The notes: generated by a model from the sequence alone, not told the origin. DNA of 64,000 nucleotides from Macrostomum hystrix (GCA_950097015.1 CATNEN010000039.1:5766001-5830000); one strand, 5' to 3'. Shown: positions 12,230 through 35,916, numbered from the stretch's first letter. Numbers and translations are program-made.

Positions 12230-13059
12230 ATGAACAGAGAAAACTGCATGCGACTTGGAGTTTGTGTGCTTGTTTGGTTGATTGCAGCCGTCAGCTGCGC
12301 TGTGCTGCCACCACAGCCTCTGAGCTACAGCTCCGTTGGTTGCTACGTCGATGGTTCGAATAGCAACAGAGACCTGCTCGGACTGCAGAATGTGCTCAGC
12401 TTCGGGCCATACAATACGGACGGCGACGCCCCAAATTTTGTCCTGAAGATGGCTCCCGGAGAGCTGCTGACGCTCGAGCTGTGCAGCCGGATCTGCTCCT
12501 ACGGCAGATTTCGCTACTTCGGCACGCAGTCCCAGGGCTACTGCGGCTGCGACTCAACCTACGGCTCATTGGGAGCCGCACCTGCCAGCGATTGTAATGG
12601 ATATCCTTGTTTTGGTAATGAGTTCCAGAAGTGCGGCGGAATCTCCAGGAATTCCATCTACGAGAACTTCTACTCACCCAGTAAGTGAGAAAAAATACAT
12701 ATTCAGAATACCTCTGTGAATATTTCTCTCACCAAGTAAGTGAGAGCATATTCAGTATTCCTCTGAGTCCGGTTTGCTAATCTAATTCGAAGCCTTTCCG
12801 CCAAAACCTACTCACAGTTGGTCCCAAGATGTCAAAGCTGTCCATGGCTTCCATGCCGAGCTTTTCCGTCAGTGCCGGGACTCCGTCGCACAGCAGCGTG
12901 CTCGCCACCAGCGACATCGAGTGCGCCGCCGCCTGCCACCGCAGCCCGGACTGTCTGGTGTGCGCCTTTGCCGAGTCCAGTCGAATGTGCCGCCTCATGA
13001 AGTTCTTCGCTGTGCCCAGCGAGGTCGCCAGCGAGTCGCAGTGGGTCTGGACCAAGTAG
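12230..13059 (+). CDS. Secreted WSC + PAN/apple-like protein, copy A (about 230 aa)
   Basis: Exons 12230-12680 and 12818-13059 (phase 1). Signal peptide, 8-Cys WSC domain (VGCYVD...LTLELCSRIC...YFGTQSQGYCGC...C...C.G...QKCGG...NSIY) and PAN-like ECAAAC...C..C...CRL. Confidence 0.88.
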
Positions 13060-13529
13060 CGGCTGTTGAAGGCCACTGATAACTTAAATAACTAAAGAGA
13101 AAGATAAATAACTGCAGAAACTCGTTTAATATTTCCCGAGCTTTTTCGTAGCCATTTTATTGCATCGAAGCAAGCAGGCTGTAGACTACTCAAACAATAA
13201 TTGATATCGATTAACCTGGCGAAATTGATTCACTGTTGACTGCTTTTTTGAAGAGTTAATTAAGAAAATAATTGCTGCCTTCTCAGAGCATCAATGGCAG
13301 CTGCGACATTTACAGAAATCGTTTGCTTTTAGCATCAATTTTTAATTATAAAAATAATTATACTTTCCTTAGTTTAATAATACTCGAACATTTTAAAACG
13401 AGGAACACTCAACTGGTAAGACAAATTTACGAAAAATGGTCAAATGATTTATGCAAGTCTAAAACTGGTCATGGTCAAACGATTAATGACGATTAAAGAC
13501 AGAAGCCTCAGCAAATGCTATGCATGGAT

Positions 13530-13690
13530 TCCCAAAGCCTCATTAGCCACTGCAACTGGAGTCCCAAAGCCTCATTAGCCACTGTAACTGGAGTCCCAAA
13601 GTCTCATCAGCCCCTGCAACTGGAGCCCAAAGCCTCATTAGCCCATGCAACTGGAGTCCCAAAGTCTTATTAGCCACTGTAACTGGAGTA
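13530..13690. repeat. 32-bp minisatellite (CCAAAGCCTCATTAGCCACTGYAACTGGAGTC), about 5 copies
   Basis: Direct tandem units about 470 bp downstream of copy A. Confidence 0.85.
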
Positions 13691-16660
13691 CTCGAGCTTA
13701 CAGCAGCCCCTCTAACTGGGATCCGGAGCTTCAGTCGAGGTTGAGGGCCGTACTAGAGGCGTACTAGAAAGCAGGCCAGTACCATTATGGTTAGTAGGTA
13801 GGCTGCGGCCGAGCCCAGTCGCTAGTTTAAGTAGCTAAGTTAAACTAGCATATTTCCGATTAAGTCGCTCACAGTTAAAGCCATCCTAGAGGCCCAAGCA
13901 ATTTAGCATTCCGGAAGCATTGTGCGAATCGCAGAATCGAATTCGTAAAAGGGACTTTCATGTGGCGAATCACTCTCCTCCCTTTGAACCCTATCCCGAC
14001 CTAGGCTGTCTCTTGGCTTTTACAAGAGATGGGCTTCGTCGATGGCTTGATGATTATCGACGTGCGGCTGATCCGTTGGGTCAACAGCGTCCTCAGCGGG
14101 GATAAGCCTTTGGGGGCACACTAGAGCCTCAGCCGAGCCTTCCGCGCCTGTGGCTCGTGCCTGCGACCAACCCAAGGGCCAGCCCGAGCCACAACTCCGA
14201 TGACTCGGAGATCCTGGAGACAGAGATGTCCTTTAAAGTGTCTCGACACCCTGCCTTCATGCTTCTGCCACCTGGTGCGAGCAGTGGAAGGTCGAACTGA
14301 TCGTAGCGAAATGCTGCCACCATCTTCACCCAACGACAAGCACCGAGTGAACCTACAGGAAGGAAGGCGGGGCAGGAAATCGACTTCGAACAGAACCCGA
14401 CCTTTCTGGGCCTTCTGTGCCGACTGGGCTTCAAACCTCCAGCTCTGCCAACGGAAGAACCACCAGCATGAAGCCATTGAAGCCCTTGCGGAGGTAAAGC
14501 AAGCCGTCCTTCGAAAGTCTGCATCTCCACCACGAGAGCGATCGCGGAGTATGGCACCAGCGTCTAGGCAGCGAGCGCAGTACCTAGCACCGGGAATTTT
14601 TTCTGGCTATCCAGCAGATCAGGAGGACCGCTTATACTGTTACGACGGTCGGCTTGCCACCAGAGCGGCCGTCCTTTCGAGAAGGCCCTAAGACAATGAG
14701 AGGAGGTCCTGGTCCACCCAACGGCGCAGCGGGTCACCACGGAGTAGCTGACAGCTGAAAAGCACCGAAGGTGGGACGCCAACAACAACGACGTCAAAGA
14801 CGTTCTCAATATTGATTGCAACCGCATCCACTGAGGATGCGGGAGAGACGGCTCCCTGTGAGCTCCCGGCCATCTCGGAGTTGGATTGGAGCGACTGCTA
14901 CCAACACAACGTCCTCGCATTGCTATCGCGGAAAATCTACTCTGCCCTGAACTGCGCAGCCCCAGACACGGAGCGCCTCATCCTCTACGTGTGTCTGCGG
15001 GGTGACCCAGTCACGGCCCGGTTCGATTTCGTTCTCGAAGATCGCTTCTCCACTCGAAGCAATTGTGAGACCGTCTTGTATCCAGCTGGCGGATAGCAGC
15101 GTCGTTCGGGTGCTGGCAAACGGAATAAGTTTAAGGTATCAAGAAATAGTACGTAAAAACTTTGAAAACAAACATCCACTGCCGAAAACAAATAATTTTC
15201 GACAAAAATGGAGCTTCCTGTGCCTACTTACAGTTAACTAAGATTCAATTCACATCGGACCTTCGTCCTTTTTAAAAGTTTTAAGTCTGCATGGATACCG
15301 TCTATTGTGTCCCGCAGGGGATGTCGGCTTAAGGATTAAGGCAATCCTCGAAGCTAACTGACATCGGGCTCCATTATAGAGCATTGAGTTGAGATACTCT
15401 TTCATACCCAAACATTTTCAAGAAAATATTTTGCATTGACATTCCACTTGACTTGGCAGTAGCGGGCCAGCAGCCCGCTCAAAACGTTTGATCGCAGCTA
15501 TAGTTGGTCATTTGTGCTTTCGAACGAGATTCTGGGAGACCACCCGTCCAAAAGGCGTTGCTAGGAGCTGTTGTGCCCACAGCTACGATCAGATTACCGC
15601 TTACCCAAAGCAAACGCTGATTTTGCGCAACCGCGGGCTGCAGTGCAGATGGCCTACAAACCGTGGCCACTTGAAACTGTGACTTCCGTCCAGCAGCTGG
15701 CAGCGGAGAGCGGCACCAAGCACGAAGGCAGGTGCTATTATCACTGTCGGTTCGTCTTCCAGGTGGCTGACAACTTGCAGCTTATCCTCGATGTGGAGAT
15801 ATGAGGTGTGGAGAGGATGGCGGCTTTTGGTCGACAAGCGACAAGGTCAGCATGTTCCTCTCACCCGCAATATTCCGCTCGTCTTCAGCATCCGCGCTGC
15901 ACCTAGCCGTTGATCCTGGCCGAAGTCACTCATACCGACAACACAGCCATGGCCACCGAGCTACGCTACGGAAGACTAACGGTGGCCGATAAACAACGGT
16001 AAGAGTCATCAAGTCATTTCTGTTGAAACCGGGCATGCGACGCGCCGTTGTTATTCTGTGGTCGGTTAGTCGGTTGGTCGGTGGTTTTCAATCAATATCA
16101 ATAATCAATTGAATCCATTGAAGTCTAAGATTGAATCCATCAGGCAAAGAGGTGGCAAAACCGTGCTTCACCTCTTTCGAGCTGTGTTGAAAATAAAGCT
16201 GAATACGGCCCTGAATACGGTTCGTGTCGGTAGCGTTTCAGTTACTTGAATCTGGACAGAGGTCGATGACTGAATACTAAAAACACTTATATCCTCTGTT
16301 TGGATTCAGTTGAGATCAGTTGGGCTAAAACAGCCTGCAGTTTAGCAGTTTAGAAAGTCGCGATTCAAAGTGCTCTTCATCCGAACTGTTGCTTAGACAT
16401 ATCTCGCACTAAAAAAATATATTTTTTAATCCAAAAACACTCCAAAACTTTCACTTCTCATCCAATTGTTCTCGATTTTAGATGCACTGTTAGAGTGCCA
16501 TTGTTGTGGAGGGCATACCCATCACCAATTGCGCTTAACCAATAAAATCCAGCGCAGACAATGCGATATAAATAATATAAATGACAACCTCTCGTCCTCT
16601 GCTCGCCGTGATTTACACAACAGATACGCTCATACCACTCGATGGTTTCTAGCCATAAAA

Positions 16661-17489
16661 ATGCTGATTAGAAACTGCATGCGACTTGGAGTTTGTGTGC
16701 TTGTTTGGTTGATTGCAGCCGTCAGCTGCGCTGTGCTGCCACCACAGCCTCTGAGCTACAGCTCCGTTGGTTGCTACGTCGATGGTTCGAGTAGCAACAG
16801 AGACCTGCTCGGACTGCAGAATGTGCTCAGCTTCGGGCCATACAATACGGACGGCGGCGCCCCGACTTTTGTCCTGAAGATGGCTCCCGGAGAGCTGCTG
16901 ACGCTCGAGCTGTGCAGCCAGATCTGCTCCTACGGCAGATTTCGCTACTTCGGCACGCAGTCCCAGGGCTACTGCGGCTGCGACTCAACCTACGGCTCAT
17001 TGGGAGCCGCATCTGCCAGCGAGTGCTCGTTTCCCTGCTATGGAAATTTATCCCAGAAATGTGGCGGTAGTTCCAGGAATTCCATCTACGAGAACTTCTA
17101 CTCACCCAGTAAGTGAGAGAAAATATACATATTCAGAATACCTCTGTGAATATTTCTCTCACCAAGTAAGTGAGAGCATATTCAGTATTCCTCTGAGTCC
17201 GGTTCGCTAATCTAATTCGAAGCCTTTCCGCCAAAACCTACTCACAGTTGGTCCCAAGATGACAAAACTGTCCATGGCTTCCATGCCGAGCTTTTCCGTC
17301 AGTGCCGGGACTCCGTCGCACAGCAGCGTGCTCGCCACCAGCGACATCGAGTGCGCCGCCGCCTGCCACCGCAGCCCGGACTGTCTGGTGTGCGCCTTTG
17401 CCGAGTCCAGTCGAATGTGCCGCCTCATGAAGTTCTTCGCTGTGCCCAGCGAGGTCGCCAGCGAGTCGCAGTGGGTCTGGACCAAGTAG
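16661..17489 (+). CDS. Secreted WSC + PAN/apple-like protein, copy B (about 229 aa)
   Basis: Exons 16661-17108 and 17248-17489. Nearly identical to copy A, intron included. Confidence 0.88.
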
Positions 17490-17974
17490 CGGTTGTTGAA
17501 GGCCACAAAAAATCCAGAAGTAACTTTCGATACTAGTCAAAGCGTTGACATTCGCTTTAATCTGTATCACGATTTCAGATCATTGAATCCGACTGGCATT
17601 AGCTTGTTTGATTAACTGGACAAAATAAGATTCGCTGTTGACTGCTTTCAAGAATGCGCTAAGAAGTGAATCATAGGATGCCCTGAGCATTCAGATCAAT
17701 GCGAATGCAATATTTTCAGCTATATCTTGCCGTCAGCCGATTAGTTTATTTGTGAAATCGACTATTAACCTGTTAACTATGCGGTGTATTTCAGTTTCAG
17801 TCATTTTCAATACAATCTGAAATTCGGTAAAGATTTTGTAAAAGTAGATTAACCAGTAAATGTAAGACATAGATTCAAGTACGGAAGAAATGCTGAAGTG
17901 CTAGCTAAATTGAAAGAGTGCGTTCTCTGATAGACAACGACGGTTAAGGACTACATCAGCCACTGTACGCTCGT

Positions 17975-19040
17975 AACGGAGTCTTGTAGTCACAGTAGCA
18001 GCTGTAACCGGAGTCCTGTAGTCACAGTTGCAGCTGTAACCGGAGTCCTGTAGTCACAGTAGCAGCTGTAACCGGAGTCCTGTAGTCACAGTTGCAGCTG
18101 TAACCGGAGTCCTGTAGTCACAGTAGCAGCTGTAACCGGAGTCCTGTAGTCACAGTTGCAGCTGTAACCGGAGTCCTGTAGTCACAGTAGCAGCTGTAAC
18201 CGGAGTCCTGTAGTCACAGTTGCAGCTGTAACCGGAGTCCTGTAGTCACAGTAGCAGCTGTAACCGGAGTCCTGTAGTCACAGTTGCAGCTGTAACCGGA
18301 GTCCTGTAGTCACAGTAGCAGCTGTAACCGGAGTCCTGTAGTCACAGTTGCAGCTGTAACCGGAGTCCTGTAGTCACAGTTGCAGCTGTAACCGGAGTCC
18401 TGTAGTCACAGTAGCAGCTGTAACCGGAGTCCTGTAGTCACAGTTGCAGCTGTAACCGGAGTCCTGTAGTCACAGTTGCAGCTGTAACCGGAGTCCTGTA
18501 GTCACAGCAGAAGCTGTAACCGGAGTCCTGTAGTCACAGTTGCAGCTGTAACCGGAGTCCTGTAGTCACAGCAGAAGCTGTAACCGGAGTCCTGTAGTCA
18601 CAGTTGCAGCTGTAACCGGAGTCCTGTAGTCACAGTTGCAGCTGTAACCGGAGTCCTGTAGTCACAGCAGAAGCTGTAACCGGAGTCCTGTAGTCACAGT
18701 TGCAGCTGTAACCGGAGTCCTGTAGTCACAGCAGAAGCTGTAACCGGAGTCCTGTAGTCACAGTTGCAGCTGTAACCGGAGTCCTGTAGTCACAGCAGAA
18801 GCTGTAACCGGAGTCCTGTAGTAACAGCAGAAGCTGTAACCGGAGTCCCTGTAGTCACCAGCAGAAGCTTTCAGTTGAGTCCTGTAGTCACAGTTGCAGC
18901 TGTAACCGGAGTCCTGTAGTCACAGTTGCAGCTGTAACCGGAGTCCTGTAGTCACAGTAGCAGCTGTAACCGAAGTCCCTGTAGTCACCACAGAAGCTGT
19001 CAGTACAGCGCAGGTTGAGTCCTGTAGTCACAGCTGTAAC
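17975..19040. repeat. 32-bp minisatellite (CTGTAGTCACAGTWGCAGCTGTAACCGGAGTC), about 30 copies
   Basis: Period 32 (GCTGTAAC at 18001, 18033 and onward). Confidence 0.95.
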
Positions 19041-21563: not shown

Positions 21564-22342
21564 ATGTTGGTTTCGTTTTTAACCATCTGGCAAGTGCTGG
21601 CGCTGGCTGCAGTGAAAACAGCATCAGCTTCCATTGTGCAGCCACCAGAACTCTTGAACTACCGATACATTGGTTGCTATAGCGACGAATCAAGTAGTAG
21701 CAGAGACCTGATCGGCCTGCAGGGTGTTCTTCAGCTGGGACCCTACGCTACCGACGCTGGCGACAGGACCTTCGTGTCTAAAACGGGCCCGGACGGCATG
21801 ACAATAGAGATGTGCGCCAGGATCTGCTCCTACGGTCGCTTTCGCTACTTTGGCACCCAGGCAAGGAGCTACTGCGCCTGCGACTGGACTTACGGCTCTT
21901 ACAGCGAGGCCTCAACGAGAAGCTGCTACTACAGGTGCGATGGAGATGCACTACAGTTTTGCGGAGGTGACTTTAAGAATTCAGTCTACGAAAGTACCTA
22001 CCCCGCATGTAAGTTTTAACAATGCTCCAAGAACCATTCGTGTACTGTGCTCGTTTTCAACAATGACCGACTAGCTGCAATGTCGAAAATCCCTCAGTTG
22101 GACCGAAGCTGACGAAGCAGGCAGCGGCGTCCATGCCAACCATCTCTGCGGTCAGCAGCTCGGTCAGCCATCGTAGCCAGTCAGCGCGGAGCGTTGTTGA
22201 ATGCGCGGCAGCCTGCCAGCGCAGCGCGGACTGCATCGCCTGCTGGTTTGTGAAGTCGAGCCAGATCTGCCGCCTGATGCGCTTCTTTGCTGTGCCCAGG
22301 GAGGTGGCCGGCGAGGCCCAGTGGGTCTGGATCAGGCAGTAG
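21564..22342 (+). CDS. Secreted WSC + PAN/apple-like protein, copy C (about 229 aa)
   Basis: Exons 21564-22008 and 22098-22342 (phase 1). Signal peptide MLVSFLTIWQVLALAA; YIGCYSD...MTIEMCARIC...FCGGDFKNSVY; ECAAACQRSADCIACWF. Confidence 0.87.
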
Positions 22343-22943
22343 TTCCTTGCTGACAATCGGAATGCTGGAATAATTTACAACAAGCAACTCTAGCTGATCA
22401 TTCCTAATTTGTTTGATAATTGATAATCCATGACACACAAATCGCTTATAAACGTTTAACTAGACATTCCTAAAAGTCAATTAATGATAAATTAGTAAAA
22501 TGTTTCTGGCAATTTATTATTGCAAAAATCTTTCGGCTCACAAAAATATAAGAAAAAGATTCTGCATGCTTAATGGACTCCGGATTCTGAACAAGAGGAA
22601 TCGATCAATAGGCCGCATTAGGTTGAGTGCGAGATAAAACTCGATTTCGCTGTCTTTAAAAGCTCATTAGAGAACCATTTAATAAGCGGTCTCTTTCTGC
22701 TGGCTTTTGTGTTCATTCAGCAAAAGTTAAAAGGTGTATCTTCAAATACTTCAGCGGAACCCTGACTTAATGGCTTCACTATAGTTAGTGGATAAGGCAG
22801 ACAAAAGGAAAAAAATCTAAAATGAAGTAAAGAGAGCATTAGCAGCATTAACAGCTGCTTTGAAAGCGATATAAATAGGATTCGGAAAGTTGCCTGCTGA
22901 TTCCCAGACTTCGCCGACAATCGTAGCCAAACCAAACTCCAAG

Positions 22944-23701
22944 ATGCGCACGGCAACAAGACAATTGTTGCTGTTGAGCCTGCATTGCTTGGCCTGCTGT
23001 GCTGTGATGCTGCCACCACAGCCTCTTGGATATCGATACGTTGGATGCTACGTCGATGGAACTAATGCCAACAGAGATGTGAAAGGTCTGGAAGAAGTCA
23101 GCAGCATTGGAGTCTACTCAACTGACCCGGGGAATCCCGTCTTCGTATATGACGCAATTCAAATGACGCTGGAAAAGTGCACTTTAATTTGCTCTTATGG
23201 GCGCTTCCGTTACTTTGGCACGCAAAGCCGCGCTTACTGCTGCTGCGGCTCATTTGGCTCGCTGGGCATTGCTGATGAATCCGATTGCATTTATCCATGC
23301 AATGGGAACACGAGCCAGACATGCGGCGGAGATTCACGGAATTCGATCTACGAGGCCCTGTACACACCAGGTAGATCCTTGACGCCGGTGTTTAGGGTAA
23401 ACTGTATCTATAGCCTATAGCCAGACTTAAATGACTTAACTGCACCTTTCCCACAGTCCAACCCAAGATGTTGAAGGTGGCTGCCGCATCTATGCCGAGC
23501 ATCACGGCCAGTTCAGGCTTCAAGAACTACCGCAGCGAGACGGCCTTCAGCACAATTGAATGCGCGGCAGCCTGCCAGCGCAGCGCGAGCTGCATCGCCT
23601 GCTGGTTTGTGAAGTCGAGCCGGATCTGCCGCCTGTTGCGCTTCTTCGCCGTGCCCAGCGAGCTGGCCAGCGAGTCTCAGTGGGTCTGGATCAAGCAGTG
23701 A
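22944..23701 (+). CDS. Secreted WSC + PAN/apple-like protein, copy D (about 223 aa)
   Basis: Exons 22944-23370 and 23457-23701 (phase 1). YVGCYVD...MTLEKCTLIC...QTCGGDSRNSIY, then a PAN-like exon ending WVWIKQ. Confidence 0.87.
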
Positions 23702-24894: not shown

Positions 24895-26570
24895 TGGTGG
24901 AATCCGAGCAGCAGGAGTTGTAGCTGGAATCGTAGCAGTAGTTGAAGCTTGAATCGTAGAAGGAATTGCAGCTGGAATCGCAGCAGGGGTTGTAGCTGGA
25001 ATCGTAGCAAGAGTTGCAGCTGGAATCACAGCAGGAGTTGCAGCTGGAATCGCAGCAGGGTTTGTAGCTTGAATCGCAGCAGTTGTTTTAGCTTAAATCG
25101 CAGCAGGGGTTGCAGCTGGAATCGCAGCAGGAGTTGCAGCTGGAATCGCAGCAGGAGTTGTAGCTTGAATCGCAGCAGGGGTTGTAGCTGGAATCGCAGA
25201 AAGGGTTGCAGCTGGAATCGCAGCAGGAGTTGCAGCTGGAATCGCAGCAGGAGTTGCAGCCGGAATCGTAGCAGGAGTTGCAGCTAGAACCGCAGCAGGA
25301 GTTGCAGCTAGAAGCGCAGCAGAGGTTGTAGCTAGAATCGCAGCAGGGGTTGTAGCTAGAAGCGCAGCAGAGGTTGTAGCTAGAATCGCAGCAGGGGTTG
25401 CAGCTAGAATTGCAGCAGGGTTGTAGCAAGAATCGCAGCAGGGGTTGTAGCTAGAATCGCAGCAGGGGTTGTAGCTAGAATCGCAGCAGGAGTTGCAGCT
25501 AGAATCGCAGCAGGAGTGGTTGCAGATAGAACCGCAGCAGGAGTTGCAGCTGGCATCGAAGACGGGGTTCGCACATGGGCTGAATCGGACGTTTTCAAAA
25601 TTGAATTTAGCTTTGACGTGCCTTGCCGTTAACTGTCGAATTTAAATCGGAGTTTGTCACTATTGAAAATCGTGGTTCAAAATTGAGGGTAAAATGGTGT
25701 AGAATCGCAGCAGGATTTGCAGCTAGAATCGCAGCAGGGGTTGTAGCTAGAATCGCAGCAGGAGTTGCAGCTAGAACCGCAGCAGTGGTTGTAGCTAGAA
25801 CCGCAGCAGTGGTTGCAGCTAGAACCGCAGCAGTGGTTGTAGCTAGAACCGCAGCAGGGGTTGTAGCTAGAACCGCAGCAGGGGTTGTAGCTAGAATCGC
25901 AGCAGGGGTTGTAGCTAGAATCGCAGCAGGGGTTGTAGCTAGAACCGCAGCAGGGGTTGTAGCTAGAATCGCAGCAGGAGTTGCAGCTAGAATCGCAGCA
26001 GGAGTGGTTGCAGATAGAACCGCAGCAGGAGTTGCAGCTGGCATCGAAGACGGGGTTCGCACATGGGCTGAATCGGACGTTTTCAAAATTGAATTTAGCT
26101 TTGACGTGCCTTGCCGTTAACTGTCGAATTTAAATCGGAGTTTGTCACTATTGAAAATCGTGGTTCAAAATTGAGGGTAAAATGGTGTAGAATCGCAGCA
26201 GGATTTGCAGCTAGAATCGCAGCAGGGGTTGTAGCTAGAATCGCAGCAGGAGTTGCAGCTAGAACCGCAGCAGTGGTTGTAGCTAGAATCGCAGCAGGGG
26301 TTGTAGCTAGAACCGCAGCAGGGGTTGTAGCTAGAATCGCAGCAGGGGTTGTAGCTAGAATCGCAGCAGGAGTTGCAGCTGGCATCGCAGCAGGGGTTGC
26401 AGCTAGAACCGCAGCAGGAGTTGCAGCTGGCATCGCAGCAGGGGTTGTAGCTAGAATCGCGGCAGGAGTTGCAGCTGGCATCGCAGCAGGGATTGTAGCT
26501 AGAATTGCAGCAGCAGTTGCATCTAGAACCGCAGCAGGGGTTGCAGCTAGAACCGCGGCAGGAGTTGGAG
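24895..26570. repeat. 24-bp minisatellite (GYAGCTAGAATCGCAGCAGGRGTT) with a 488-bp higher-order duplication that includes a unique spacer
   Basis: The spacer GGCATCGAAGACGGGG...AAAATGGTGT occurs at about 25552-25700 and again at about 26040-26188. Confidence 0.92.
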
Positions 26571-26934
26571 CAAACAAGCGAGTGAGTGGGGATAAATGCA
26601 AAATCAATATGCAATAAAGGGGATAAAGCCAAGCTAGTCTAGAACTGGGGGTGGTTAAAGATATGCCTCATGGAATCAATCATGTCGCTCCCTGATCGTG
26701 AAATTCTGGGCAAACACACGTCTGTCATGAGTCAGTTTTCAGCTAGTCTGACAAGGAGCTTTGTTGTTGGAAAATGTTGACTTACCAAACGTGACCACAG
26801 TTTGTCTTTATAAAAGGACTGAGTCTAACGGTAAGTCGAATCATGGGGCAAACTTAAAAAATTAAAAGTAAAGTTAACTCACTATTGACGACAGTTTCAG
26901 TTCGTCCAAGTCTTATTCAATGCTGTAGGCAACC

Positions 26935-28446
26935 ATGTACCTTCTACTAATGTCAGATTCGTCGAAGGTCAAGCAGTTTCTGGCGCTGACGCTGGTTCTG
27001 ACGTCAGCGGCACTTGGCTTATTCGTGTCTGGCCAGCCGACCGTCAAGTTCGTCAGCTACATCGGCTGCTACGTCGACGGAAACGACACCTCCAGGGATC
27101 TTCGCGGCCTCAGAGGGATCCGCCAGCTCGGCATGTTCGATAGGATCAGCCCGGAAGGTGGCTACATCTTCCGCGCTGACATGTCAGTCGGCGTGTGCAC
27201 GGGCCTGTGCTCTCTTGGCCGTTTCCGCTTCTTCGGTCTGCAGGCGACTGGCTTCTGTAGCTGCGGCCGGACCTACGGGCTGCACGGAGCGGCTGCCGAG
27301 ACCGACTGCAGCCAGAACTGTTTGGGCAACGCCTCGCAGAAGTGCGGCGGCTGGCTGCGGAACTCTGTCTACGAGATTTCCTATGAAGATGGCGAGTTGC
27401 GGCAGATTTTTGGCCTGGGAACTGATTCCAGGAACTTTGGTCAAAACTGGTTTTCAGTCAAACTGACGCCTAGCGTTGGGTTTTGGGACTAAACTATTTT
27501 TTAGGAATTCCAAGCAAAAGTCGGCCAAAACGCATGCATCAATGCTCTTTAACAGTAGAAAGCTATTGTTCCACTGGGGGAAGACCAAGGGGCTATTTCA
27601 AATACCCACTGCCTACTCCACGATGGCTCCCAAACCGAATGAGGGATTTTTATGAAAGGATCGAAATTTTCCGCCCTTTACGATCTTAGACTTCCTAGGC
27701 CGTCGGACGTCAGCATCTTCGAGATGTCTATTGATTCTGGTGACCAAGGCCTAAGACCCTGGTGACAACGATAAGTAAGATTACTCAGTACAAACATCCA
27801 TGGCGAATCCATTTTGGTTCAAAAATGACAAAACCAAGAAAGACGAAAGTTGTTTCGTCCGATTGAGCGGAAAATTTCCTGGCGATTGGTTAAATATTTT
27901 GGAAGATACAGAAAAAGAGGAAAAATGGGGTTGCCGTGGTCTTTCTACTGTTAAGCTTAATACGCTTAATAATAAGCTTAATAAGATATATACATACGAG
28001 TACTTTTTGTCTAATTTCTTAAGCGGGTTAGATAGAATTGTACATCTAACCCAGAAGTTAGCTGTCGCTCAACGCACAGTAGGACTTTAGATCTAATCGC
28101 TAGAGAAAAAATTCTCCTAGCTCTTCTTGCTGTCTCCTGACGAAAGTCAAAAGTTTCGTTAATAAAGTTTAATTTTGTATGTTCAACTCCTGCAGCCACC
28201 GGCATCTACAAGGCGACATGGTCCTCTGGACGGCCTCTGGTTCTAGGCGCTGGATTTAGCGTCAACACACACTGCAACCTGCCGGCCAATGTGGACTTTG
28301 AGTGCTTCGCCGTCTGCCACAACAACCCGGGCTGTGTCGCCTGCACATTCGAGCAGGTCAGCCGGATGTGCAGACTCATGCTGTTCGCCGCTGTGCCGAG
28401 CGAGGTCGCCGTCAGCGTGTCTCCTTGGCTCTGGTTGAAGCTCTGA
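26935..28446 (+). CDS. Secreted WSC + PAN/apple-like protein, copy E (about 235 aa), probable GC-AG intron
   Basis: Exon 1 is 26935-27391 (donor G|GCGAGT). Exon 2 is 28196-28446, absent from the ORF track, and reads ATGIYKATWSSGRPLVLGAGFSVNTHCNLPANVDFECFAVCHNNPGCVACTFEQVSRMCRLMLFAAVPSEVAVSVSPWLWLKL*. Confidence 0.8.
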
Positions 28447-28544
28447 CGGACTGATTAGTCCACTGCTAGGAATGGTGATTTGCTAGCCGATCTAACTAAC
28501 CAGACATTAAAGACAGTTCATTATTTTATAACTGTGAAAGACAC

Positions 28545-28990
28545 GAGACGAGTAGCAGATAGATTAAAGCTTTTGCCTCTCACTCCAAGGTCCCTGAGCT
28601 CGATTCCGCGGCGAGGCCACATTAATTTTGGGCGCTGCCGCAGTAAGAGTGCTACCCTGACTTAGGGTCTTGTCCTAGATTTTAAACCCTTGGAGGGCCA
28701 ACCCTTAATACACAGTTAGAGTTGTACACTGCCTGTAGATGAGAAAGTCAGGGCAGATGTATGAGTGTGTACTCAGGAAGACAATGCTGCAGGACGGACC
28801 GGCAGACCACCCTGACTGGCCCCGCGCCATCGCCTGTCTGCGGGCCTACAGGGGTTAGCGGTATGGGCGACCCTCGCCTTCCCTCTGTGTACATGGACCA
28901 CCCTGCAGCTAAGTGAAGTCAGTGTACTCAGGAGTCGGTGTCTACTGTCACTGAATGATGTACCAGCTGTCGAACGAGACCTTGAAACAT
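28545..28990 (+). mobile_element. tRNA-derived SINE family 2, long copy
   Basis: Degenerate A/B-box head plus body blocks TTTGCCTCTCAC, GGCGAGGCCACATT, GAGGGCCAACC, TACACTGCCTG..GATGAGAAAGTCAGGGCAGATGTA and CTGAATGATGT shared with the 47168 and 52270 copies. Confidence 0.7.
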
Positions 28991-29375
28991 AACTTTTTGT
29001 CTGTAAGCTTCTAGATCTCTGCATCTCTTATTAGTTTCAATTCATCAAAGGCTACAGATTGGAATAGTAAATTTTCATTATTGCTTCATGGCAGGCAAAT
29101 AAACAACAGCTTGCAACTGAGCAACATATCTGGGACATGCTTGAGACAATAACCGCTTTTCTTTTAGCAGCAATCCTGCGCGCCCTCATGTGAGAGTTGG
29201 TCAATAACATAAGCCAGTTGCTAGGCAGTGTCACAAGCCCAGCCTACAGAAAATGGGCATTGTCGCCTATTCGCTCGTCGGATTCAAAGCGGGTCGCTTT
29301 CAAATCGCTTTCGCCGCTACCTGACAAAGCAATCAAACTGGGCAGCCTAGGGAGAGAGAGAAATCCTCAGCAGCA

Positions 29376-31174
29376 ATGCTTCAAATGTTACATCCCCTAA
29401 TATTCTTGCTATCAGCTGTTCTGTGCGGCACAGTGGTGTCCGGCCAGCCCACAATTAGTTCCACCAGCTACATCGGCTGCTTCGTCGACGGTCCGGACGG
29501 CAGCAGAGACATGGTGGGCATGAGCGCCTTCTCAGTATTCGGCTCAGTCAACGTCGGTTTCGGGCTGGTCTACAAGCCGGACATGACAATCCAGACCTGT
29601 AGCCGCCTGTGCGCTCTGGGCCGCTTTCGCTACTTCGCATTGCAGGCCACTGCGTTCTGCGCCTGCGACTCCACCTACGGAAGTTACGGTGCGGCATTGT
29701 TGACTGAATGCAACCAAAACTGCGCTGGAAATACGTCGCAGGTCTGCGGAGGCGCGTATAGGAATTCCATCCACGAAAATGTTTATGCTCTAGGTAGGAC
29801 ACTTGATTTGTTACTTGAATTTGTTATCTGTGATTCGATAAAACTCGAAAGCAGCTCATTTTACTAGTATAATATTTTTTTACGGTTTGCTCCCGTTTCT
29901 TTCCCTTCCGGTTTTTAGTCAAGAACAAGACCATAACAACCATTTGAGACTATACCGGACCACATCAGACCATTCTAGATCACATCAGACCATTCTAGAC
30001 CACATCAGACCATTCTAGACCACATCAGATCATTCTAGATCACATCAGACCATTCTAGACCACATCAGATCATTCTAGACCACATCAGACCATTCTAGAC
30101 CACATCAGACCATTCTAGATCACATCAGATCATTCTAGACCACATCAGATCATTCTAGACCACATCAGATCATTCTAGACCACATCAGATCATTCTAGAC
30201 CACATCAGACCATTCTAGACCACATCAGATCATTCTAGACCACATCAGATCATTCTAGACCACATCAGATCATTCTAGACCACATCAGATCATTCTAGAC
30301 CACATCAGACCATTCTAGACCACATCAGATCATTCTAGACCACATCAGATCATTCTAGACCACATCATACCATTCTAGACCACATCAGACCATTCTAGAT
30401 CACATCATATCATTCTAGACCACATCAGACCATTCTAGATCACATCAGATCATTCTAGACCACATCAGATCATTCTAGACCACATCAGACCATTCTAGAC
30501 CACATCAGATCATTCTAGACCACATCATACCATTCTAGACCACATCAGACCATTCTAGATCACATCATATCATTCTAGACCACATCAGACCATTCTAGAT
30601 CACATCAGATCATTCTAGACCACATCAGATCATTCTAGACCACATCAGATCATTCTAGACCACATCAGATCATTCTAGACCACATCAGATCATTCTAGAC
30701 CACATCAGACCATTCTAGATCACATCAGATCATTCTAGACCACATCAGACCATTCTAGATCACATCAGATCATTCTAGACCACATCAGACCATTCTAGAT
30801 CACATCAGATCATTCTAGACCACATCAGACCATTCTAGATCACATCAGATCATTCTAGACCACACCGTAATATAACCGGACCATTTTCTAATGCATGCCT
30901 GTTTACTTTCAAACCCCCTTCCGAAGGCTCAAAGTTCACCAAGATGTCGTCTTCTGCCTACAGGCTGGTCGTGGACTCCGGCCAGACAGCCGTAACCTAC
31001 TGGAGCCAGCAGCCAACATCCAGCAGGATGAAGTGCGTGGCCGCCTGCCAGCGCAGCCCGTCATGTTTCGCCTGCGCCTTCGTGCAGTCAAGCCTGGCCT
31101 GCCGGCTGCTGACGTACGCCTCGGTACCAGCCGCTATAGCGAACGAGACAGCATGGATCTGGATGAGGAACTAG
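29376..31174 (+). CDS. Secreted WSC + PAN/apple-like protein, copy F (about 221 aa)
   Basis: Exons 29376-29793 and 30927-31174 (phase 1). YIGCFVD...MTIQTCSRLC...QVCGGAYRNSI; MKCVAACQRSPSCFACAF...WIWMRN. Confidence 0.85.
29955..30865. repeat. 20-bp minisatellite (CACATCAGAYCATTCTAGAY), about 45 copies, in the copy F intron
   Basis: Exact 20-bp periodicity built from two related 10-mers. Confidence 0.95.
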
Positions 31175-32180
31175 CAAGGCCACTAAGTTCGATTGAAAAA
31201 ATCCTCAGAAAAAAATTGATCAGTTTGACAAAGCTTTTCAAAGAATGAAAAAATGGCGCCATGGATGCAAGTTTTAGGGCCACCTGTGGAACAATGTTGA
31301 GAAAAACAGAAACTTTTGGAAGCAATTTTCCCCATTGAAAACCACCTCTATTCATTCTCAAATTCTATCGTGTTCAGTCGTTTGACGACAGGAATCGAGC
31401 CAGCCATTCAAAATTAGCTAGCAATGACGGCGACAGTTCCATACTGAGAAACAATGTCGAAAATATAACTTTGCGTTTTTGTGAGGCTTTTGTGCCTTTT
31501 TTAAGGCAAGCTATTGTGAAGAGACTTCTACTAGCGGTATACGCGCGAGTGAACTGAATGAGAATTTTTAGACACGCGAAACCTATGGCTCTTGGCAGAT
31601 ACGGTTGCAAAGAAATATTTTAGCTTTCGTGCAGTGGTACGTTTAGATCATGATTTCTTTAGGGAGTCTATTCGCTTATTACGACAGATTTTTAAGCCGG
31701 TGAAGCATTAACGTCACTTTACAATAGGAATAGAAATATTTGGAATCATGACTTAACTTTGTTTTCATCGAAAACTGTAGCTCGGCTGTCGGCTGTTATT
31801 GGATGTCACTTCACATTTCCTGCAACACAGTGCCAGTCACTGACTGTTGACAACAAGAAGATCTGGACTTAAGTTGGTTCAATGCCGCTTTGAATAGCTA
31901 TCGACTTGCAGAGCCCTTTAGTCACAAAATTGAGAACAAAGGCGCGTTTAAGCCAAGAATTTTTAACCAGAACACACGTGTCTAAACCAGATCCTTTGGT
32001 TATTTTCAAGAAGGAACTCAACCTAAGGCACTTAAACACTGAAAATTCAGTTGAAGCCTTCGAAAATCGATCCGAAAGCATTTGATATTTTTAAGTTAAA
32101 AAGCAGACTTTCTGCATAGATCGGCCTTGCTTGCAACAAAATACAGCCCGGGCTTCAGTTCCGACAAGGATTAAGCGACT

Positions 32181-34461
32181 ATGTCTGGGCTCGTAGCACT
32201 AGGCTTCTATTTGGCAGTCTGTTGCGTTGCAGGTAAGATAATCGCATAATGACTTTCAATGAAATAAAATCAGAGCTAATGAAGGATTTGGAAAGTTTGT
32301 GTTCATGCCAACAGCAACCCAGCCGGGGCCACTGTCTCTAGCTAGACGTGAGTACCACCTTGTTAACGTGCCCATATACGTCAACGTTTCAACGGCCAAA
32401 CGCATCGTCAGTTTATCCAATGTGCGCTCTGAGATCGACTGTGTAACAATGTGCCAAGCGGTTGGCTGCGCTCTGGCCGTTTCTCGACAGGCCCTCGGAA
32501 TCTGTAGCATGGTGGCCAGCGACGGAGATTCTGCAGGCAAGAGTACCGAGGTCACACGGATTCAGCTGGGCTCCGAGCCAGATGCGAGAGTGTGGAAAGC
32601 AGTGCCGGAACTGGGAAGCCAAGAGGAACTGCCAGCGAAGATTAATGTCACATTTGTGTTTAATTGTGAGTCATGAAGCTGTAAGCATCAAAGAATTTCA
32701 CTCAACATTTCAGAACATGAAAATATCAACAAATGATGTACTTCAACAACGCCATAAGTGCTTGCCTCGTAGCTTAGGCAGTCGATAGAGCTCAGAGCAG
32801 GGCAGGCTTGTGCAGTGGTTGAGTAGCAATTGTTACCAGAGGTACAGTAACACAACCATTACGAACGTTGCCATTAACCTTACTTGATCATCCAGCAGCA
32901 GGCCACAGGTTTTAATAGGCACCAGGTGCCCCAGACAGTCGGGGCATGGTGTCATGGACTCTGCATTGTCGTCGCGACCAGGCTTATTATTCCTTTACCT
33001 TACAGTCTTCCTTTTTGTGGATGACGTCCTACAAGATGTAACAGCGATCCAATAGAATTGTTCGTGAAATTATTATAATTCAAATTCATGCCAAAACTGC
33101 ACTTTAAACTGCACTGCACAAAAACTATACAGTTGTGGCACGAATTCGAACTAAAACAATTTCAGGAACGATTATATAGGATCGTCGATGAAGCCTGAAG
33201 CGAGCGACGGTATCACATTGTCCCTTTGAGAGTGTCACGCAGAAGGACTGTTCGGTGTGTGTTTAAGTTTAAGTTTTTTGGTAGTTGGTTTAGTCCATCA
33301 GGCAGGGCTTCGGACTGAAGCGCAGCGCCCACCAGCTGGCCAAAAAATTACCCCAATCAGCATGTTTAACAATGTCAGATAGAAAAGCCGATCATATCAA
33401 ACCAGGAACTAGCTTTTATTTATCAATTTACGAAGGTCTACCAATCTGGGATCCATGCTGCTCAGAAAAACTTTATCTTCTGATCGCGAAATCTGATCAG
33501 ATAAAAGAAAAAATTAATTCCATCTGTATACACTCAAGAGCTGGGATGTCATTAGGCGTGCAACTTTAACATTTAGACACCGGCCAAGGAAGAACCGGCC
33601 GGGCACAGCAGGCAAACATCAGCCAGCCTGGTTGCTACCGGGTTGAAGCGGTTGGTGCCAGCGGTGGCAGCTCTAACGCAAGGCAGGGAGGCAGTGGCGC
33701 TGTGGCTAGCGGTAGCTTCACGGTGGCAGTAGCCGGGACGCTGCTGCTAGTTGTGGTCGGTCAAGCTGGGGGCCCTGGAGTCGGCACTAGTGCAGGCGGA
33801 GGCGGTGGCGGCGGTAGCTTTGTCTACACTGACACGAACGAGAGCGGACAGAGGCAGCTCTTCATTGCGGCAGGAGGCGGCGGAGGTGCCTCAAGCAGTA
33901 ATAACGGTGAGGAGTTATAGCATAAACCCTCAATCATAATTTTTCTCTTGGCCAATTTATTCAGCACTTCTCAAAGCAGGTCAGTCTGGCCGGAGCGGCA
34001 GTGGCGGTGGCGACTCTGTCGGCTCCAGCGCGCCCTTCGTTGGCACAGGCGGCGTCGACGGCCAGCCGGGCTACAATGATCCGGCCGCGGCCAACCCGGC
34101 TAAGAATCACGGCGGCTGTGGCGCCGGCTGGCTTGGCAGTGCGGTCAGCGCAAGACGCCGCGACAGTGACGGCGAGCGAGGCGGCAGCTGGGCCGATAAC
34201 TGGCTGGGCGGGCTAGGTGGCAGCAGCGACGGCGGAGACGGCGGATTCGGCGGCGGTGGCGGCGGCGGCGGCAGCATGGGAGCCGGCGGTGGTGGAGGTG
34301 GCTACAGCGGAGGCGGCGCCGGCCTGAAGGACGATCACGCTGGAGGCGGTGGCGGCTCTTATTGCAGCCCCGCCGCAGCTGGCTGCCTCACTGGCATCAG
34401 TGTCAGCATTGGAAATGGCTACGTTACAATGCGTCTGGTGACGCCATTCGGCAGTTGTTAA
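32181..34461 (+). CDS. Secreted PAN/apple-like + ALK/LTK-type glycine-rich domain protein, 4 exons, about 409 aa
   Basis: Exons 32181-32232 (signal MSGLVALGFYLAVCCVA), 32315-32665 (EIDCVTMCQAVGC...GICSM), 33577-33906 (GCYRVEAVGASGG...LLVVVGQAG...GGGGGGGSFVY...LFIAAGGGGG) and 33965-34461 (GGCGAGW...GGFGGGGGG...GGGGGYSGGG...AGGGGGSY...NGYVTM). All introns are phase 1. Acceptors at 33977 and 33980 are also in frame. Confidence 0.83.
33046..33184. mobile_element. Small degenerate inverted-repeat element (MITE-like) in an intron
   Basis: CGATCCAATAGAATTGTTCGTGAAATT mirrors AATTTCAGGAACGATTATATAGGATCG. Confidence 0.5.
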
Positions 34462-34640
34462 GAGCTGTGATAAAGCTTTCAGCACGGGTATCATATATTT
34501 AACGAAAAATTACTGCAACAAAGCTTTATATTCGTAGTTTTCTGACCGTTTTATAATGCTTCAAAATACAAGCATTGATTTTGCTTAACTATTTAACAAA
34601 TGAAAAAAACGGTGTCATTCAGTTTTCCTAATATAGAAAA

Positions 34641-34890
34641 GGGGTTTTAGCCTAAGTGGTTAGAGCGCCGGACTCGCGGCTTAAAATTTGTGGGTTCGAT
34701 TTCCGACTCCACTAGAACAATTTGCGTCCTTAAACACTTAACTCTGTGTTTTTCTGTTCACCCAGCTGTTTTATGGGTACCTGCATAAGCTGGACCCAGT
34801 CCATGGACTGAAAACCACACTCAGATTTCAGGTGCGCCGCGCAAAAGCTGCGGCTGTGCTGTCGGCTGCACATCTGGCCCACTGTTATGA
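34641..34890 (+). mobile_element. tRNA-derived SINE family 1 (CORE-like central domain)
   Basis: A box TAGCCTAAGTGG and B box GGTTCGATTTCC, followed by CACTTAACTCT...TTCACCCAGCTGT..ATGGGTACC. The body is shared with the 41288, 51255 and 54090 copies. Confidence 0.78.
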
Positions 34891-35157
34891 CAAGGGACTG
34901 CGATGGCATGTGAAAGTTGCTTCCAAAGTTGCGTATTTTTGTATTGAATGTTAAAAATATTTTTTTTGCAGAAAAAATGTCTACAATACTTTTTTATTAT
35001 TGTACAAAAAACTAAAAAAAAGATAGCTTTCCGGAAAAAATTGTCAGCTAAACTTTTCTAAACTTTGAAACGTGCCTCAAGAATTAGTGAATAGTGTTTG
35101 TCGTAAGAAAGCATCTAACTCGATTTCTCGATAACGTCGTCAATATCCGCTGTTCCA

Positions 35158-35916
35158 TCACAGCTTCAACCAGACGTTCAGTGTCTCGATGGCAATCTCG
35201 GCAGGCACAGCGGCAAACCTCACTAGGCGACACATCTGGCGCGACTGTACAAACGAGAATGCGAGACAGTTAGCGCTGAGCTGGCAAGCGGCAGCGCACT
35301 CGAAGGCTTGAGAAGCCGGCTGGCTCCAGTGCGTATTGTTAATTAGTACTCCCGGAGCAGGCTCAAGGACAGATGCGGAAACGGACATCAACTTGTAGAG
35401 TCCAGTGCCTGAGGACATTGTTAGAAAGACACCGCGCTAGTAACAGTTCTCAAAAATAAATTATATGTAACTGCCATTTACTGTATGCTTACCTGGCTTG
35501 TAGAAAGTTTCATAGACTGAATTTTGGTTAGGACCGCCACAGATCTGCGAGGAATTTCCTACACAAGCTTGAATACAACCTGTTGGATTCGGCCCATAGC
35601 GTCCATATGTCTGACCACAGAAGCAGAATGCTGTAGCTTGCACGCTGAAAAAGCGAAATCTACCCATGGCACAAATTTTGCTGCACATTTCGATTGTCAT
35701 ATCAGTTGTGTAAACGCATCCATCCTGCATTCCTGTGTAGGGACCGATGCGAGAGTAGCCAACAATGCCTGTTATGTCTCTATTGCCATCTGAGCCATCA
35801 ACATAGCAACCAATATAGTTGAAGCTACTAACACTCGGCTGCCCCACCGCTACGGAGAACACAAGCGATGCCAGCAGTGTAATCAACTCGACACAGCTCA
35901 CCATTGTTAAGACCAT
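35158..35916 (-). CDS. Secreted WSC + PAN/apple-like protein, copy G (about 224 aa), inverted relative to A-F
   Basis: Exons 35916-35493 and 35408-35158 (phase 1). YIGCYVD...MTIEMCSKIC...QICGGPNQNSVY; ECAAACQLSANCLAFSF...CRL. Confidence 0.87.

What the first reader, a model, noticed from the sequence alone, without database searches (positions are those of the whole stretch)
12230..35916. Tandem cluster of seven diversified secreted WSC + PAN/apple two-domain genes
Seen: seven paralogs in about 24 kb share one plan. Exon 1 carries a signal peptide and an 8-Cys WSC domain, a phase-1 intron follows at the same position, and exon 2 carries a minimal PAN/apple-like module ending in a W-x-W-like motif, with no TM segment. 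Cysteines and G(R)FR(Y/F)F are conserved while the loop after 'RD' varies strongly. Established: WSC domains bind carbohydrates (yeast Wsc1, fungal beta-glucan-binding proteins; also present in Kremen and polycystin-1), and PAN/apple domains mediate glycan or protein binding. Inference: a lineage-specific family of small soluble two-site lectins, possibly a variable recognition system for immunity, mucus, adhesion or reproduction. I know no named family with this exact minimal architecture.
Basis: partly seen in the sequence, partly recalled or inferred. Interest (0 to 1): 0.82.

Follow-up and report, generated by a model that had tools for sequence, protein, structure and literature searches.

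The report
Flatworm secreted WSC-PAN gene cluster
Seven neighbouring two-exon genes in a Macrostomum flatworm genome each encode a small secreted protein made of two related binding modules (WSC, then PAN/apple); they are one local branch of a family of about a hundred or more such genes that I found only in Macrostomum, and what they do is still untested.

Summary
The window has exactly seven intact copies, each with a signal-peptide-like start and an 8-Cys WSC domain in exon 1. A phase-1 intron follows at one homologous codon, and exon 2 is a short PAN/apple module that runs to the stop. All seven match Pfam WSC. Five of seven match PAN_1 above cut-off, and exon 2 models confidently as a PAN fold.

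M. lignano gene models of 205-235 aa, some derived from RNA-seq, carry both domains with the same junction, so the exons are spliced together at least in the sister species.

The cluster is not a unique seven-gene invention. The genome (earlier notes name it M. hystrix) has at least 95 WSC-exon/PAN-exon pairs in many clusters. Two earlier reports of this scan described the same family on other DNA of this genome.

The copies are old and under purifying selection (dS saturated, dN/dS 0.2-0.7), with patches of gene conversion. I found no sign of diversifying selection.

The minimal architecture appeared only in Macrostomum. WSC plus PAN_4 co-occur elsewhere in larger environmental proteins.

The most likely function is secreted lectin-like binding. 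A seminal-fluid role is a reasonable lead, because WSC proteins dominate prostate-limited transcripts in M. lignano, but it is untested for this subfamily.

The parts
12230..12680 (+). c1 exon 1: signal-peptide-like start plus WSC domain; phase-1 donor A|GTAAGT
12818..13059 (+). c1 exon 2: PAN/apple module up to the stop codon
   Evidence: folded, pLDDT 86, PAN matches
16661..17108 (+). c2 exon 1 (WSC). It is 96% identical to c1 over the 836-bp gene body only
17248..17489 (+). c2 exon 2 (PAN)
21564..22008 (+). c3 exon 1 (WSC, best Pfam score at 53 bits); donor T|GTAAGT
22098..22342 (+). c3 exon 2 (PAN)
22944..23370 (+). c4 exon 1 (WSC)
23457..23701 (+). c4 exon 2 (PAN; PAN_1 at 19.7 bits, just under the cut-off). 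Its 3' 144 bp are 91.7% identical to c3
26935..27391 (+). c5 exon 1 (WSC). The homologous phase-1 donor is GC (G|GCGAGT); an alternative GT lies at 27439
28196..28446 (+). c5 exon 2 (PAN), acceptor CTGCAG|CC
29376..29793 (+). c6 exon 1 (WSC)
30927..31174 (+). c6 exon 2 (PAN; PAN_1 at 19.4 bits). The 1.1-kb intron holds a minisatellite with a unit of about 20 bp at 29958-30864
35493..35916 (-). c7 exon 1 (WSC), the only minus-strand copy
35158..35408 (-). c7 exon 2 (PAN, best PAN_1 score at 31.6 bits). It lacks the fifth Cys and the first Trp of WxW

Best explanation
The region is a tandem cluster of seven intact two-exon genes, eight with a neighbour just outside the window. It lies in a Macrostomum flatworm genome.

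Shown:
- Each gene encodes a protein of about 221-235 residues: a cleavable signal peptide, a WSC domain with four disulfides, and a short PAN/apple domain with two core disulfides that ends the protein.
- Both modules have the PAN superfold, so the product is a compact, disulfide-rich tandem of two related extracellular binding modules.
- The cluster is one local branch of a family of at least 95 genes, specific to Macrostomum as far as I could search.
- The family grew by old tandem duplications, is kept by purifying selection and is patched by short gene-conversion tracts.

Inferred:
- The proteins act outside the cell as soluble lectin-like binders. The WSC half would contact glycans, as in fungal WSC proteins. 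The PAN half would contact a glycan or a protein, as in HGF, factor XI and apicomplexan PAN lectins.
- The variable loops would tune ligand preference between paralogues.

Lead, not shown:
- The most likely setting is a secretory gland product, and seminal fluid is the best single candidate. WSC-domain proteins are the largest annotated class among prostate-limited transcripts of M. lignano.
For: - Seven paired exon sets, all open.
- WSC matches in 7 of 7 and PAN_1 matches in 5 of 7 above cut-off.
- A conserved phase-1 intron with canonical splice sites. The same intron is present in distant paralogues such as L002.
- Eight invariant Cys in exon 1 and four in exon 2.
- A hydrophobic N-terminus and no TM segment.
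- The exon-2 model has pLDDT 86. Foldseek's listed top matches (to rank 50) are PAN/apple domains, apart from two thyroglobulin chains in the full-length search. VIA Z is 6-7.5 with rmsd 2.2-2.9 over 60-74 residues.
- M. lignano proteins of 205-235 aa have the same plan, junction and C-terminus. GenBank models of that genome come from a genome-guided RNA-seq assembly (PMC5730564).
- The full-length M. lignano homologue folds at pLDDT 88.7 and pTM 0.75. Its WSC half matches Kremen, Wsc1 and glyoxal oxidase at E about 1e-6.
- In the genome, 93 PAN exons have an exon-1-like WSC 80-2710 bp upstream on the same strand, and two more were shown by tblastn.
- dN/dS is 0.2-0.7.
- About 26 of the 45 BLAST-annotated prostate-limited M. 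lignano transcripts hit WSC proteins (PMC5977470 Table S1). Knock-down of the WSCD2-like Mlig-pro46 lowers sperm competitive ability (PMC6953679).
Against: - No expression data for this genome were available, and no ligand was tested.
- The published prostate-limited WSC transcripts could not be matched to the WSC-PAN subfamily. At least one of them has two WSC domains instead (PMC4490696).
- The genome holds more than 400 WSC units, so a reproductive role for some WSC proteins says little about these seven.
- c4 and c6 fall just under the PAN_1 cut-off.
- c5 needs a GC donor or a weak GT donor.
- The signal peptides were judged by hydropathy only.
Confidence: 0.7

Rival explanations
1. The proteins are seminal-fluid (prostate gland) products transferred at mating. 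They bind glycans on sperm or in the partner's antrum, and the large family reflects sexual selection.
For: - WSC-domain hits dominate the annotated prostate-limited transcripts of M. lignano.
- The WSCD2-like Mlig-pro46 affects sperm competitiveness.
- The prostate transcript RNA815_80.4 has WSC domains.
- Several listed transcripts of 500-1000 nt align to only one WSC domain, which leaves room for a second, unrecognised domain.
Against: - No sequence link could be made between those transcripts and WSC-PAN genes.
- Subfamilies of the cluster predate the split from M. lignano, and dN/dS is below 1. That is slower turnover than is typical of fast-evolving seminal proteins.
- The genome has hundreds of other WSC units.
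Confidence: 0.3
2. They are innate-immune or mucus lectins that recognise microbial wall glycans (beta-glucan, chitin) at the epidermis or gut.
For: - WSC domains of fungi bind wall polysaccharides, and PAN lectins of Apicomplexa bind galactose. This is established family knowledge; SML-2 and MIC4 appear among the structural matches.
- The family is large, clustered and secreted, with variable loops.
Against: - There is no signal of diversifying selection.
- There are no induction data.
- Nothing in the flanks is immune-related.
Confidence: 0.2
3. They are structural or adhesive secretions (eggshell, cement or adhesive glands, rhabdites) in which the disulfide-rich modules cross-link a matrix. 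The odd Cys count would allow intermolecular disulfides.
For: - Five of the seven mature products have 13 Cys.
- The WSC halves are acidic and the PAN halves neutral to basic.
Against: - The proteins are small and lack low-complexity or repeat regions typical of matrix proteins.
- The odd Cys is not invariant: c7 lacks it, and c4 and c5 have 14 Cys.
Confidence: 0.1
4. The exons belong to separate genes, or the copies are decaying pseudogenes, so the architecture is an artefact of reading ORFs.
For: - No transcript data exist for this genome in the tools.
- c5 lacks a GT at the homologous donor.
- Some family members elsewhere are visibly degraded: L004, L006 and the second L005 copy.
Against: - All 14 exons are open, and the phase and position of the intron are conserved in all seven copies and in distant paralogues.
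- dN/dS is below 1.
- RNA-seq-based M. lignano CDS span both domains with the same junction.
- 93 of 115 PAN exons in the genome sit just downstream of a WSC exon.
Confidence: 0.03

Closest known systems
Macrostomum lignano 'WSC domain-containing protein' models (e.g. BOX15_Mlig013640g1 = P0006; A0A1I8GV01, A0A1I8GZK9, A0A1I8IHA2)
   Same: They share the signal peptide, WSC, PAN plan, the length (205-235 aa), the exon junction (Y-x-P, one codon, then the PAN part) and the C-terminal W-x-W-x-K. Identity to the window copies is 43-56%. Both sub-branches of the window cluster have M. lignano counterparts.
   Different: They come from another species. They are named only by automatic annotation, most of them after the WSC domain alone. 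No paper I could find describes them.
Prostate-limited WSC-domain seminal-fluid candidates of M. lignano (Mlig-pro46, RNA815_80.4 and others; PMC5977470, PMC6953679, PMC4490696)
   Same: They are small secreted WSC-domain proteins of the same genus and belong to the same large WSC expansion.
   Different: Membership of the WSC-PAN subfamily is not shown. RNA815_80.4 has two WSC domains, and no PAN domain is mentioned in those papers.
Yeast Wsc1 cysteine-rich domain, fungal WSC proteins and human Kremen1 WSC
   Same: They share the WSC fold, the eight-Cys pattern and the CGG motif. Structural matches have E about 1e-6. WSC is a PAN/apple-fold derivative (PMC9024836).
   Different: Wsc1 is a membrane-anchored wall sensor. 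Kremen is Kringle-WSC-CUB with a TM segment. Fungal WSC proteins carry enzyme domains or WSC repeats. None is a signal peptide-WSC-PAN mini-protein. Pfam finds no other domain in the window products.
Apicomplexan tandem PAN/apple lectins (Sarcocystis SML-2, Toxoplasma MIC4) and the HGF / plasminogen N-terminal PAN domains
   Same: Exon 2 shares their fold (Z 6-7). SML-2 is likewise a small secreted tandem of two PAN-fold modules that binds sugar.
   Different: Sequence identity is only 12-20%. Their modules are both classical PAN domains, without the WSC-type long loop and its two extra disulfides.
Environmental multi-domain proteins with several WSC domains plus PAN_4 (P0071, P0169, P0111)
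   Same: WSC and a PAN-clan domain occur in one chain.
   Different: They are 426-809 aa with two or three WSC copies, and the PAN is the PAN_4 type. Their organisms are unknown (metagenome or Logan contigs). They are not the minimal one-plus-one plan.

Membership tests
WSC domain (Pfam PF01822) | Match to the family HMM above the gathering score | tested here: met
   All seven exon 1 products score 37.5-53 bits against a cut-off of 27.8.
WSC domain (Pfam PF01822) | Eight conserved cysteines and the CGG motif | tested here: met
   Eight invariant Cys and an invariant C-G-G in alignment A1.
WSC domain (Pfam PF01822) | WSC fold as in Kremen1 and Wsc1 | tested here: met
   Tested on the full-length M. 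lignano homologue P0006, not on a window product: Foldseek E 1.5e-6 to 1.4e-5 against 5fwv, 7pz2 and 9n3u.
WSC domain (Pfam PF01822) | Carbohydrate binding | not testable with these tools
   Needs a glycan array or pull-down with recombinant protein.
PAN/apple (Pfam PF00024, PAN clan) | Match to a PAN-clan HMM above the gathering score | tested here: inconclusive
   Five of seven are above 21.4 bits (23.5-31.6). c4 scores 19.7 and c6 scores 19.4, just under the cut-off.
PAN/apple (Pfam PF00024, PAN clan) | Core pattern C-x3-C on a helix, then C ... C-x-L on strands (two core disulfides) | tested here: met
   Four invariant Cys in E-C-x3-C ... C-x4-F ... C-R-L. The helix at residues 32-41 of the model carries the first two. 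Disulfide pairing itself was not measured.
PAN/apple (Pfam PF00024, PAN clan) | PAN fold: five-stranded sheet around one helix | tested here: met
   The model of c1 exon 2 has pLDDT 86. Foldseek's listed top rows (to rank 50) are all PAN domains. VIA Z is 6-7.5, rmsd 2.2-2.9, over 60-74 aligned residues, against HGF, plasminogen, SML-2, MIC4 and FXI, with a thyroglobulin region on top. Z under 8 alone would be weak; the uniform list and the Pfam matches carry the call.
Kremen / WSCD sulfotransferase / polycystin-1 type WSC proteins | Companion domains (Kringle and CUB; sulfotransferase; PKD, REJ and TM) | tested here: not met
   Pfam finds only WSC and PAN, and there is no TM segment. The stop codon follows the PAN module directly.
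Secreted protein | N-terminal signal peptide and no membrane anchor | tested here: inconclusive
   Each copy has a hydrophobic core (12-aa KD 2.0-2.8) followed by small residues and then Q-P or P-P-Q-P, and no later hydrophobic 19-mer. No dedicated predictor was available.
Macrostomum seminal-fluid proteins | Prostate-limited expression and transfer in the ejaculate | not testable with these tools
   Only family-level literature is available.
Diversified recognition families under positive selection | dN/dS above 1 in the variable loops of recent paralogues | tested here: not met
   Pairwise dN/dS is 0.2-0.7. The divergent c1/c2 patch has pN 0.20 against pS 0.71. Site models were not run because dS is saturated.

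The most novel reading that the evidence does not exclude
The WSC-PAN family could be a Macrostomum-specific arsenal of a hundred or more seminal-fluid lectins. Its two PAN-fold halves would bridge sperm or ejaculate glycans to the partner's reproductive tract. Gene conversion would homogenise the scaffolds while the binding loops are kept distinct, as in the c1/c2 patch. This would be a new molecular class for sexual-conflict studies in hermaphrodites.
Probability: 0.2. Interest if true: 0.65.

Novelty: new variant of a known kind. Interest (0 to 1): 0.4.

Why it matters
Macrostomum is a model for regeneration and for sexual selection in hermaphrodites. Its seminal-fluid candidates are dominated by poorly described 'WSC' proteins. 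Defining a large, genus-restricted family with a fixed two-module plan gives those studies concrete gene sets to knock down and to place by in situ hybridisation. It also adds a natural example of WSC and PAN, two branches of one fold, joined in a minimal secreted protein. It does not reveal a new mechanism, and the same family has already been reported twice by this scan.

Tried and rejected
- I tested whether L002 is an intron-less paralogue, which would have proved the join. Its 257-aa open frame turned out to read through a short in-frame GTGAGT...TTTTAG intron at the usual site.
- I looked for a gene-conversion donor for the c1/c2 divergent patch. No other place in the assembly matches either version better (73-79%) than they match each other (83%).
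- I tested ORF 32299-32676 as an eighth, orphan PAN exon. Pfam finds nothing and hhalign gives 1% probability.
- I tried to link the published prostate-limited transcripts to this subfamily. The supplements hold BLAST tables but no sequences or primers.
- The ESM Atlas look-up found no large cluster with both WSC and PAN. This is a lead only.
Each exon was handled apart, and natural full-length M. lignano proteins served as stand-ins.


Full report
**What is there.** The window is eukaryotic. Earlier notes of this scan place the genome in Macrostomum. My own searches agree: the best outside relatives are M. lignano proteins at 43-56% identity. The window is G000:C39:5766001-5830000 of a 220-Mb assembly. 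It is not human.

A tblastn of the candidate exon products against the whole window finds exactly seven exon-1 places and seven exon-2 places, paired in order on the same strand. Six pairs are on the plus strand and one is on the minus strand. All 14 reading frames are open.

**Domains.**
- Pfam WSC (PF01822) matches all seven exon-1 products above the gathering score, at 37.5-53 bits.
- PAN_1 (PF00024) matches five exon-2 products above its cut-off. The other two, c4 and c6, score about 2 bits below it, with weaker PAN_3 and PAN_4 matches alongside.
- The exon-1 alignment has eight invariant Cys, an invariant G-R-F-R-x-F and C-G-G.
- The exon-2 alignment has four invariant Cys in the classic PAN spacing, a fifth Cys in six copies, and W-x-W in six copies.
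- The loop after RDxxG has a mean pairwise identity of 0.23, against about 0.6 in the neighbouring core, and it carries indels.

**Gene structure.** In every copy, a donor in phase 1 lies five codons after the NS[IV][YH]E motif. An acceptor in the matching phase lies upstream of the PAN frame. Introns range from about 84 bases to about 1.1 kb.

Six donors are GT. In c5 the homologous site reads G|GCGAGT, so this is either a GC-AG intron or use of a weak GT 48 bases on. This point is open. The same intron sits in a distant paralogue: L002 has a 66-base GTGAGT...TTTTAG intron.

Every search and fold used single exons of the window or natural full-length proteins of M. lignano.

**Are the exons one gene?** M. 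lignano has predicted proteins of 205-235 aa that align end to end with exon 1, one junction codon, and exon 2. They end at the same W-x-W-x-K tail. Some of them are GenBank BOX15_Mlig models (P0006, P0009, P0074). That annotation was built from a genome-guided RNA-seq transcriptome (PMC5730564). So the two domains are spliced together in real transcripts of the sister species.

Within this genome, 93 of 115 PAN-exon matches have an exon-1-like WSC 80-2710 bases upstream on the same strand.

**Fold.** c1 exon 2 was folded with a 29-row alignment of paralogues and M. lignano proteins. The model has pLDDT 86 and pTM 0.74, with a helix carrying the C-x3-C pair packed on a five-stranded sheet.
- All the Foldseek matches listed (to rank 50) are PAN/apple domains: HGF N domain, plasminogen, SML-2, MIC4, factor XI, prekallikrein, leech antiplatelet protein and a fungal copper oxidase. 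E-values are modest, about 0.01.
- The second-look aligner gives Z 6-7.5, rmsd 2.2-2.9, over 60-74 of 79 residues.
- Z below 8 is not decisive alone. Together with the Pfam matches and the uniform hit list, I take the PAN fold as established.

The full-length M. lignano homologue P0006 folds at pLDDT 88.7 and pTM 0.75. Its first half matches Kremen1, yeast Wsc1 and a glyoxal oxidase WSC at E about 1e-6. The Wsc1 structure paper shows that WSC itself is a PAN-fold core wrapped by a long disulfide-stapled loop (PMC9024836). The product is therefore a tandem of two related modules.

**Secretion.** Each copy starts with a hydrophobic stretch followed by small residues and Q-P or P-P-Q-P. No later segment is hydrophobic enough for a membrane span. 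No signal-peptide predictor was available, so this rests on hydropathy and on the disulfide-rich extracellular domain types.

**Size and spread of the family.**
- The genome holds more than 400 WSC candidates.
- Profiles of the window's exon 1 and exon 2 find at least 150 and 115 places. Only the best candidates are scored, so these are lower bounds.
- Pairing them gives 93 genes, plus two more confirmed by tblastn. They lie in clusters on contigs C1, C15, C33, C39 and C3.
- The local cluster has an eighth member about 10 kb before the window (L001).
- Two earlier reports of this scan described the same family on other pieces of this genome. They name the species M. hystrix and estimate 150 to hundreds of copies. 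My count is compatible with theirs.

**Outside Macrostomum.**
- A profile of the whole unit, searched against 1.84 billion representatives, returned mainly multi-WSC proteins. Every hit that matched the whole unit in one stretch and that I looked up was M. lignano.
- A word search with the PAN part alone found only M. lignano.
- WSC and PAN_4 do co-occur in larger proteins from environmental contigs. The domain pair is therefore not unique, but the minimal secreted form seems to be.
- Limits: transcriptomes of other flatworms may be missing from these libraries, and only the top 150 hits were visible.

**Evolution.**
- Apart from c1 and c2, synonymous divergence between copies is saturated and dN/dS is 0.2-0.7.
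- A tree of exon-1 parts puts all seven copies in a well-supported clade (SH-aLRT 97) with M. lignano proteins interleaved. c1-c4 form one branch and c5-c7 lie outside it. The cluster's sub-branches are therefore older than the species split.
- c1 and c2 are 96% identical, but only across the 836-base gene body. Of their 33 differences, 20 fall in 63 bases that encode the WSC long loop. There pS is 0.71 and pN is 0.20, against pS 0.022 elsewhere. This is a mosaic of old and homogenised sequence, which points to gene conversion and not to a burst of adaptive change. No donor is present in the assembly.
- c3 and c4 share a 144-base tract of 91.7% identity in the PAN exon.
- I see no evidence for a hypervariable recognition system.

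**Function.** The anatomy is shown: secreted, two binding-type modules, conserved scaffolds, variable loops. The activity is inferred: soluble lectin-like binding, with two sites per chain.

For the biological setting the only outside data are from M. lignano. About 26 of the 45 BLAST-annotated prostate-limited transcripts hit WSC proteins (PMC5977470 Table S1). One prostate transcript has two WSC domains (PMC4490696). Knock-down of the WSCD2-like Mlig-pro46 lowers sperm competitive ability (PMC6953679). None of these could be tied to the WSC-PAN subfamily, so I hold the seminal-fluid reading at about 0.3, immune or mucus lectins at about 0.2, and matrix roles at about 0.1.

**Verdict.** It is overstated on uniqueness and on 'variable recognition'. 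This is a new variant of known kinds (WSC and PAN binding modules), uncharacterised in the literature I could search, and already met twice in this scan.

Noticed in passing
window 12581-12643 versus 17012-17071: c1 and c2 are near-identical over 836 bp, except for a 63-bp patch in the WSC long loop that holds 20 of their 33 differences (pS 0.71 against 0.022 outside). This is a conversion mosaic, and no donor is present in the assembly. c2 keeps the N-x-S sequon here (GNLSQ); c1 has lost it (GNEFQ).
   Followed up: yes
window 22197-22340 versus 23556-23699: The 3' parts of the PAN exons of c3 and c4 are 91.7% identical, while the rest of the two genes is saturated. This is probably a short gene-conversion tract.
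   Followed up: partly
window 27388-27397: c5 has GC instead of GT at the homologous phase-1 donor (GAT G|GCGAGT). It may be a GC-AG intron.
   Followed up: partly
window 17958-19000; 24898-26573; 29958-30864; also about 38.0-38.5, 40.0-40.7, 46.3-46.9 and 47.9-49.2 kb: There are several long minisatellites, with units of about 32, 24 and 20 bp. One fills most of the c6 intron. They produce long spurious ORFs on both strands.
   Followed up: no
window 33702-33917 and 34276-34458 (+): Two glycine-rich ORFs lie between c6 and c7. They hit successive parts of Pfam ALK_LTK_GRD (positions 77-118 and 172-203) at E 0.03-0.07. They may be exons of a gene with an ALK/LTK-type glycine-rich domain.
   Followed up: partly
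window 32299-32676 (+): This ORF has a PAN-like Cys spacing (E-I-D-C-x3-C ... C ... C-S-M). Pfam finds nothing and profile comparison gives 1% probability, so it is unresolved.
   Followed up: yes
window 428-1063 (-), 4556-5227, 5754-7104, 41550-52171 (-), 58263-59282: The flanking genes are ordinary: GRASP55/65 PDZ, ankyrin repeats, a protein kinase, a biotin-carboxylase (pyruvate-carboxylase-like) gene and a SAM/Pointed domain gene. None is related to the cluster.
   Followed up: partly
all seven copies: The WSC halves are acidic (pI 4.5-6.0, c5 7.4) and the PAN halves neutral to basic (7.5-9.6). Five of the seven mature products have an odd number of Cys (13), which hints at a free thiol or an intermolecular disulfide.
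   Followed up: no
L005 8161-8352 (-), L006, L004 (G000:C39 13.39, 13.34 and 11.24 Mb): Some family members elsewhere look degraded, with lost core Cys or a truncated WSC exon. The family therefore includes pseudogenes.
   Followed up: no
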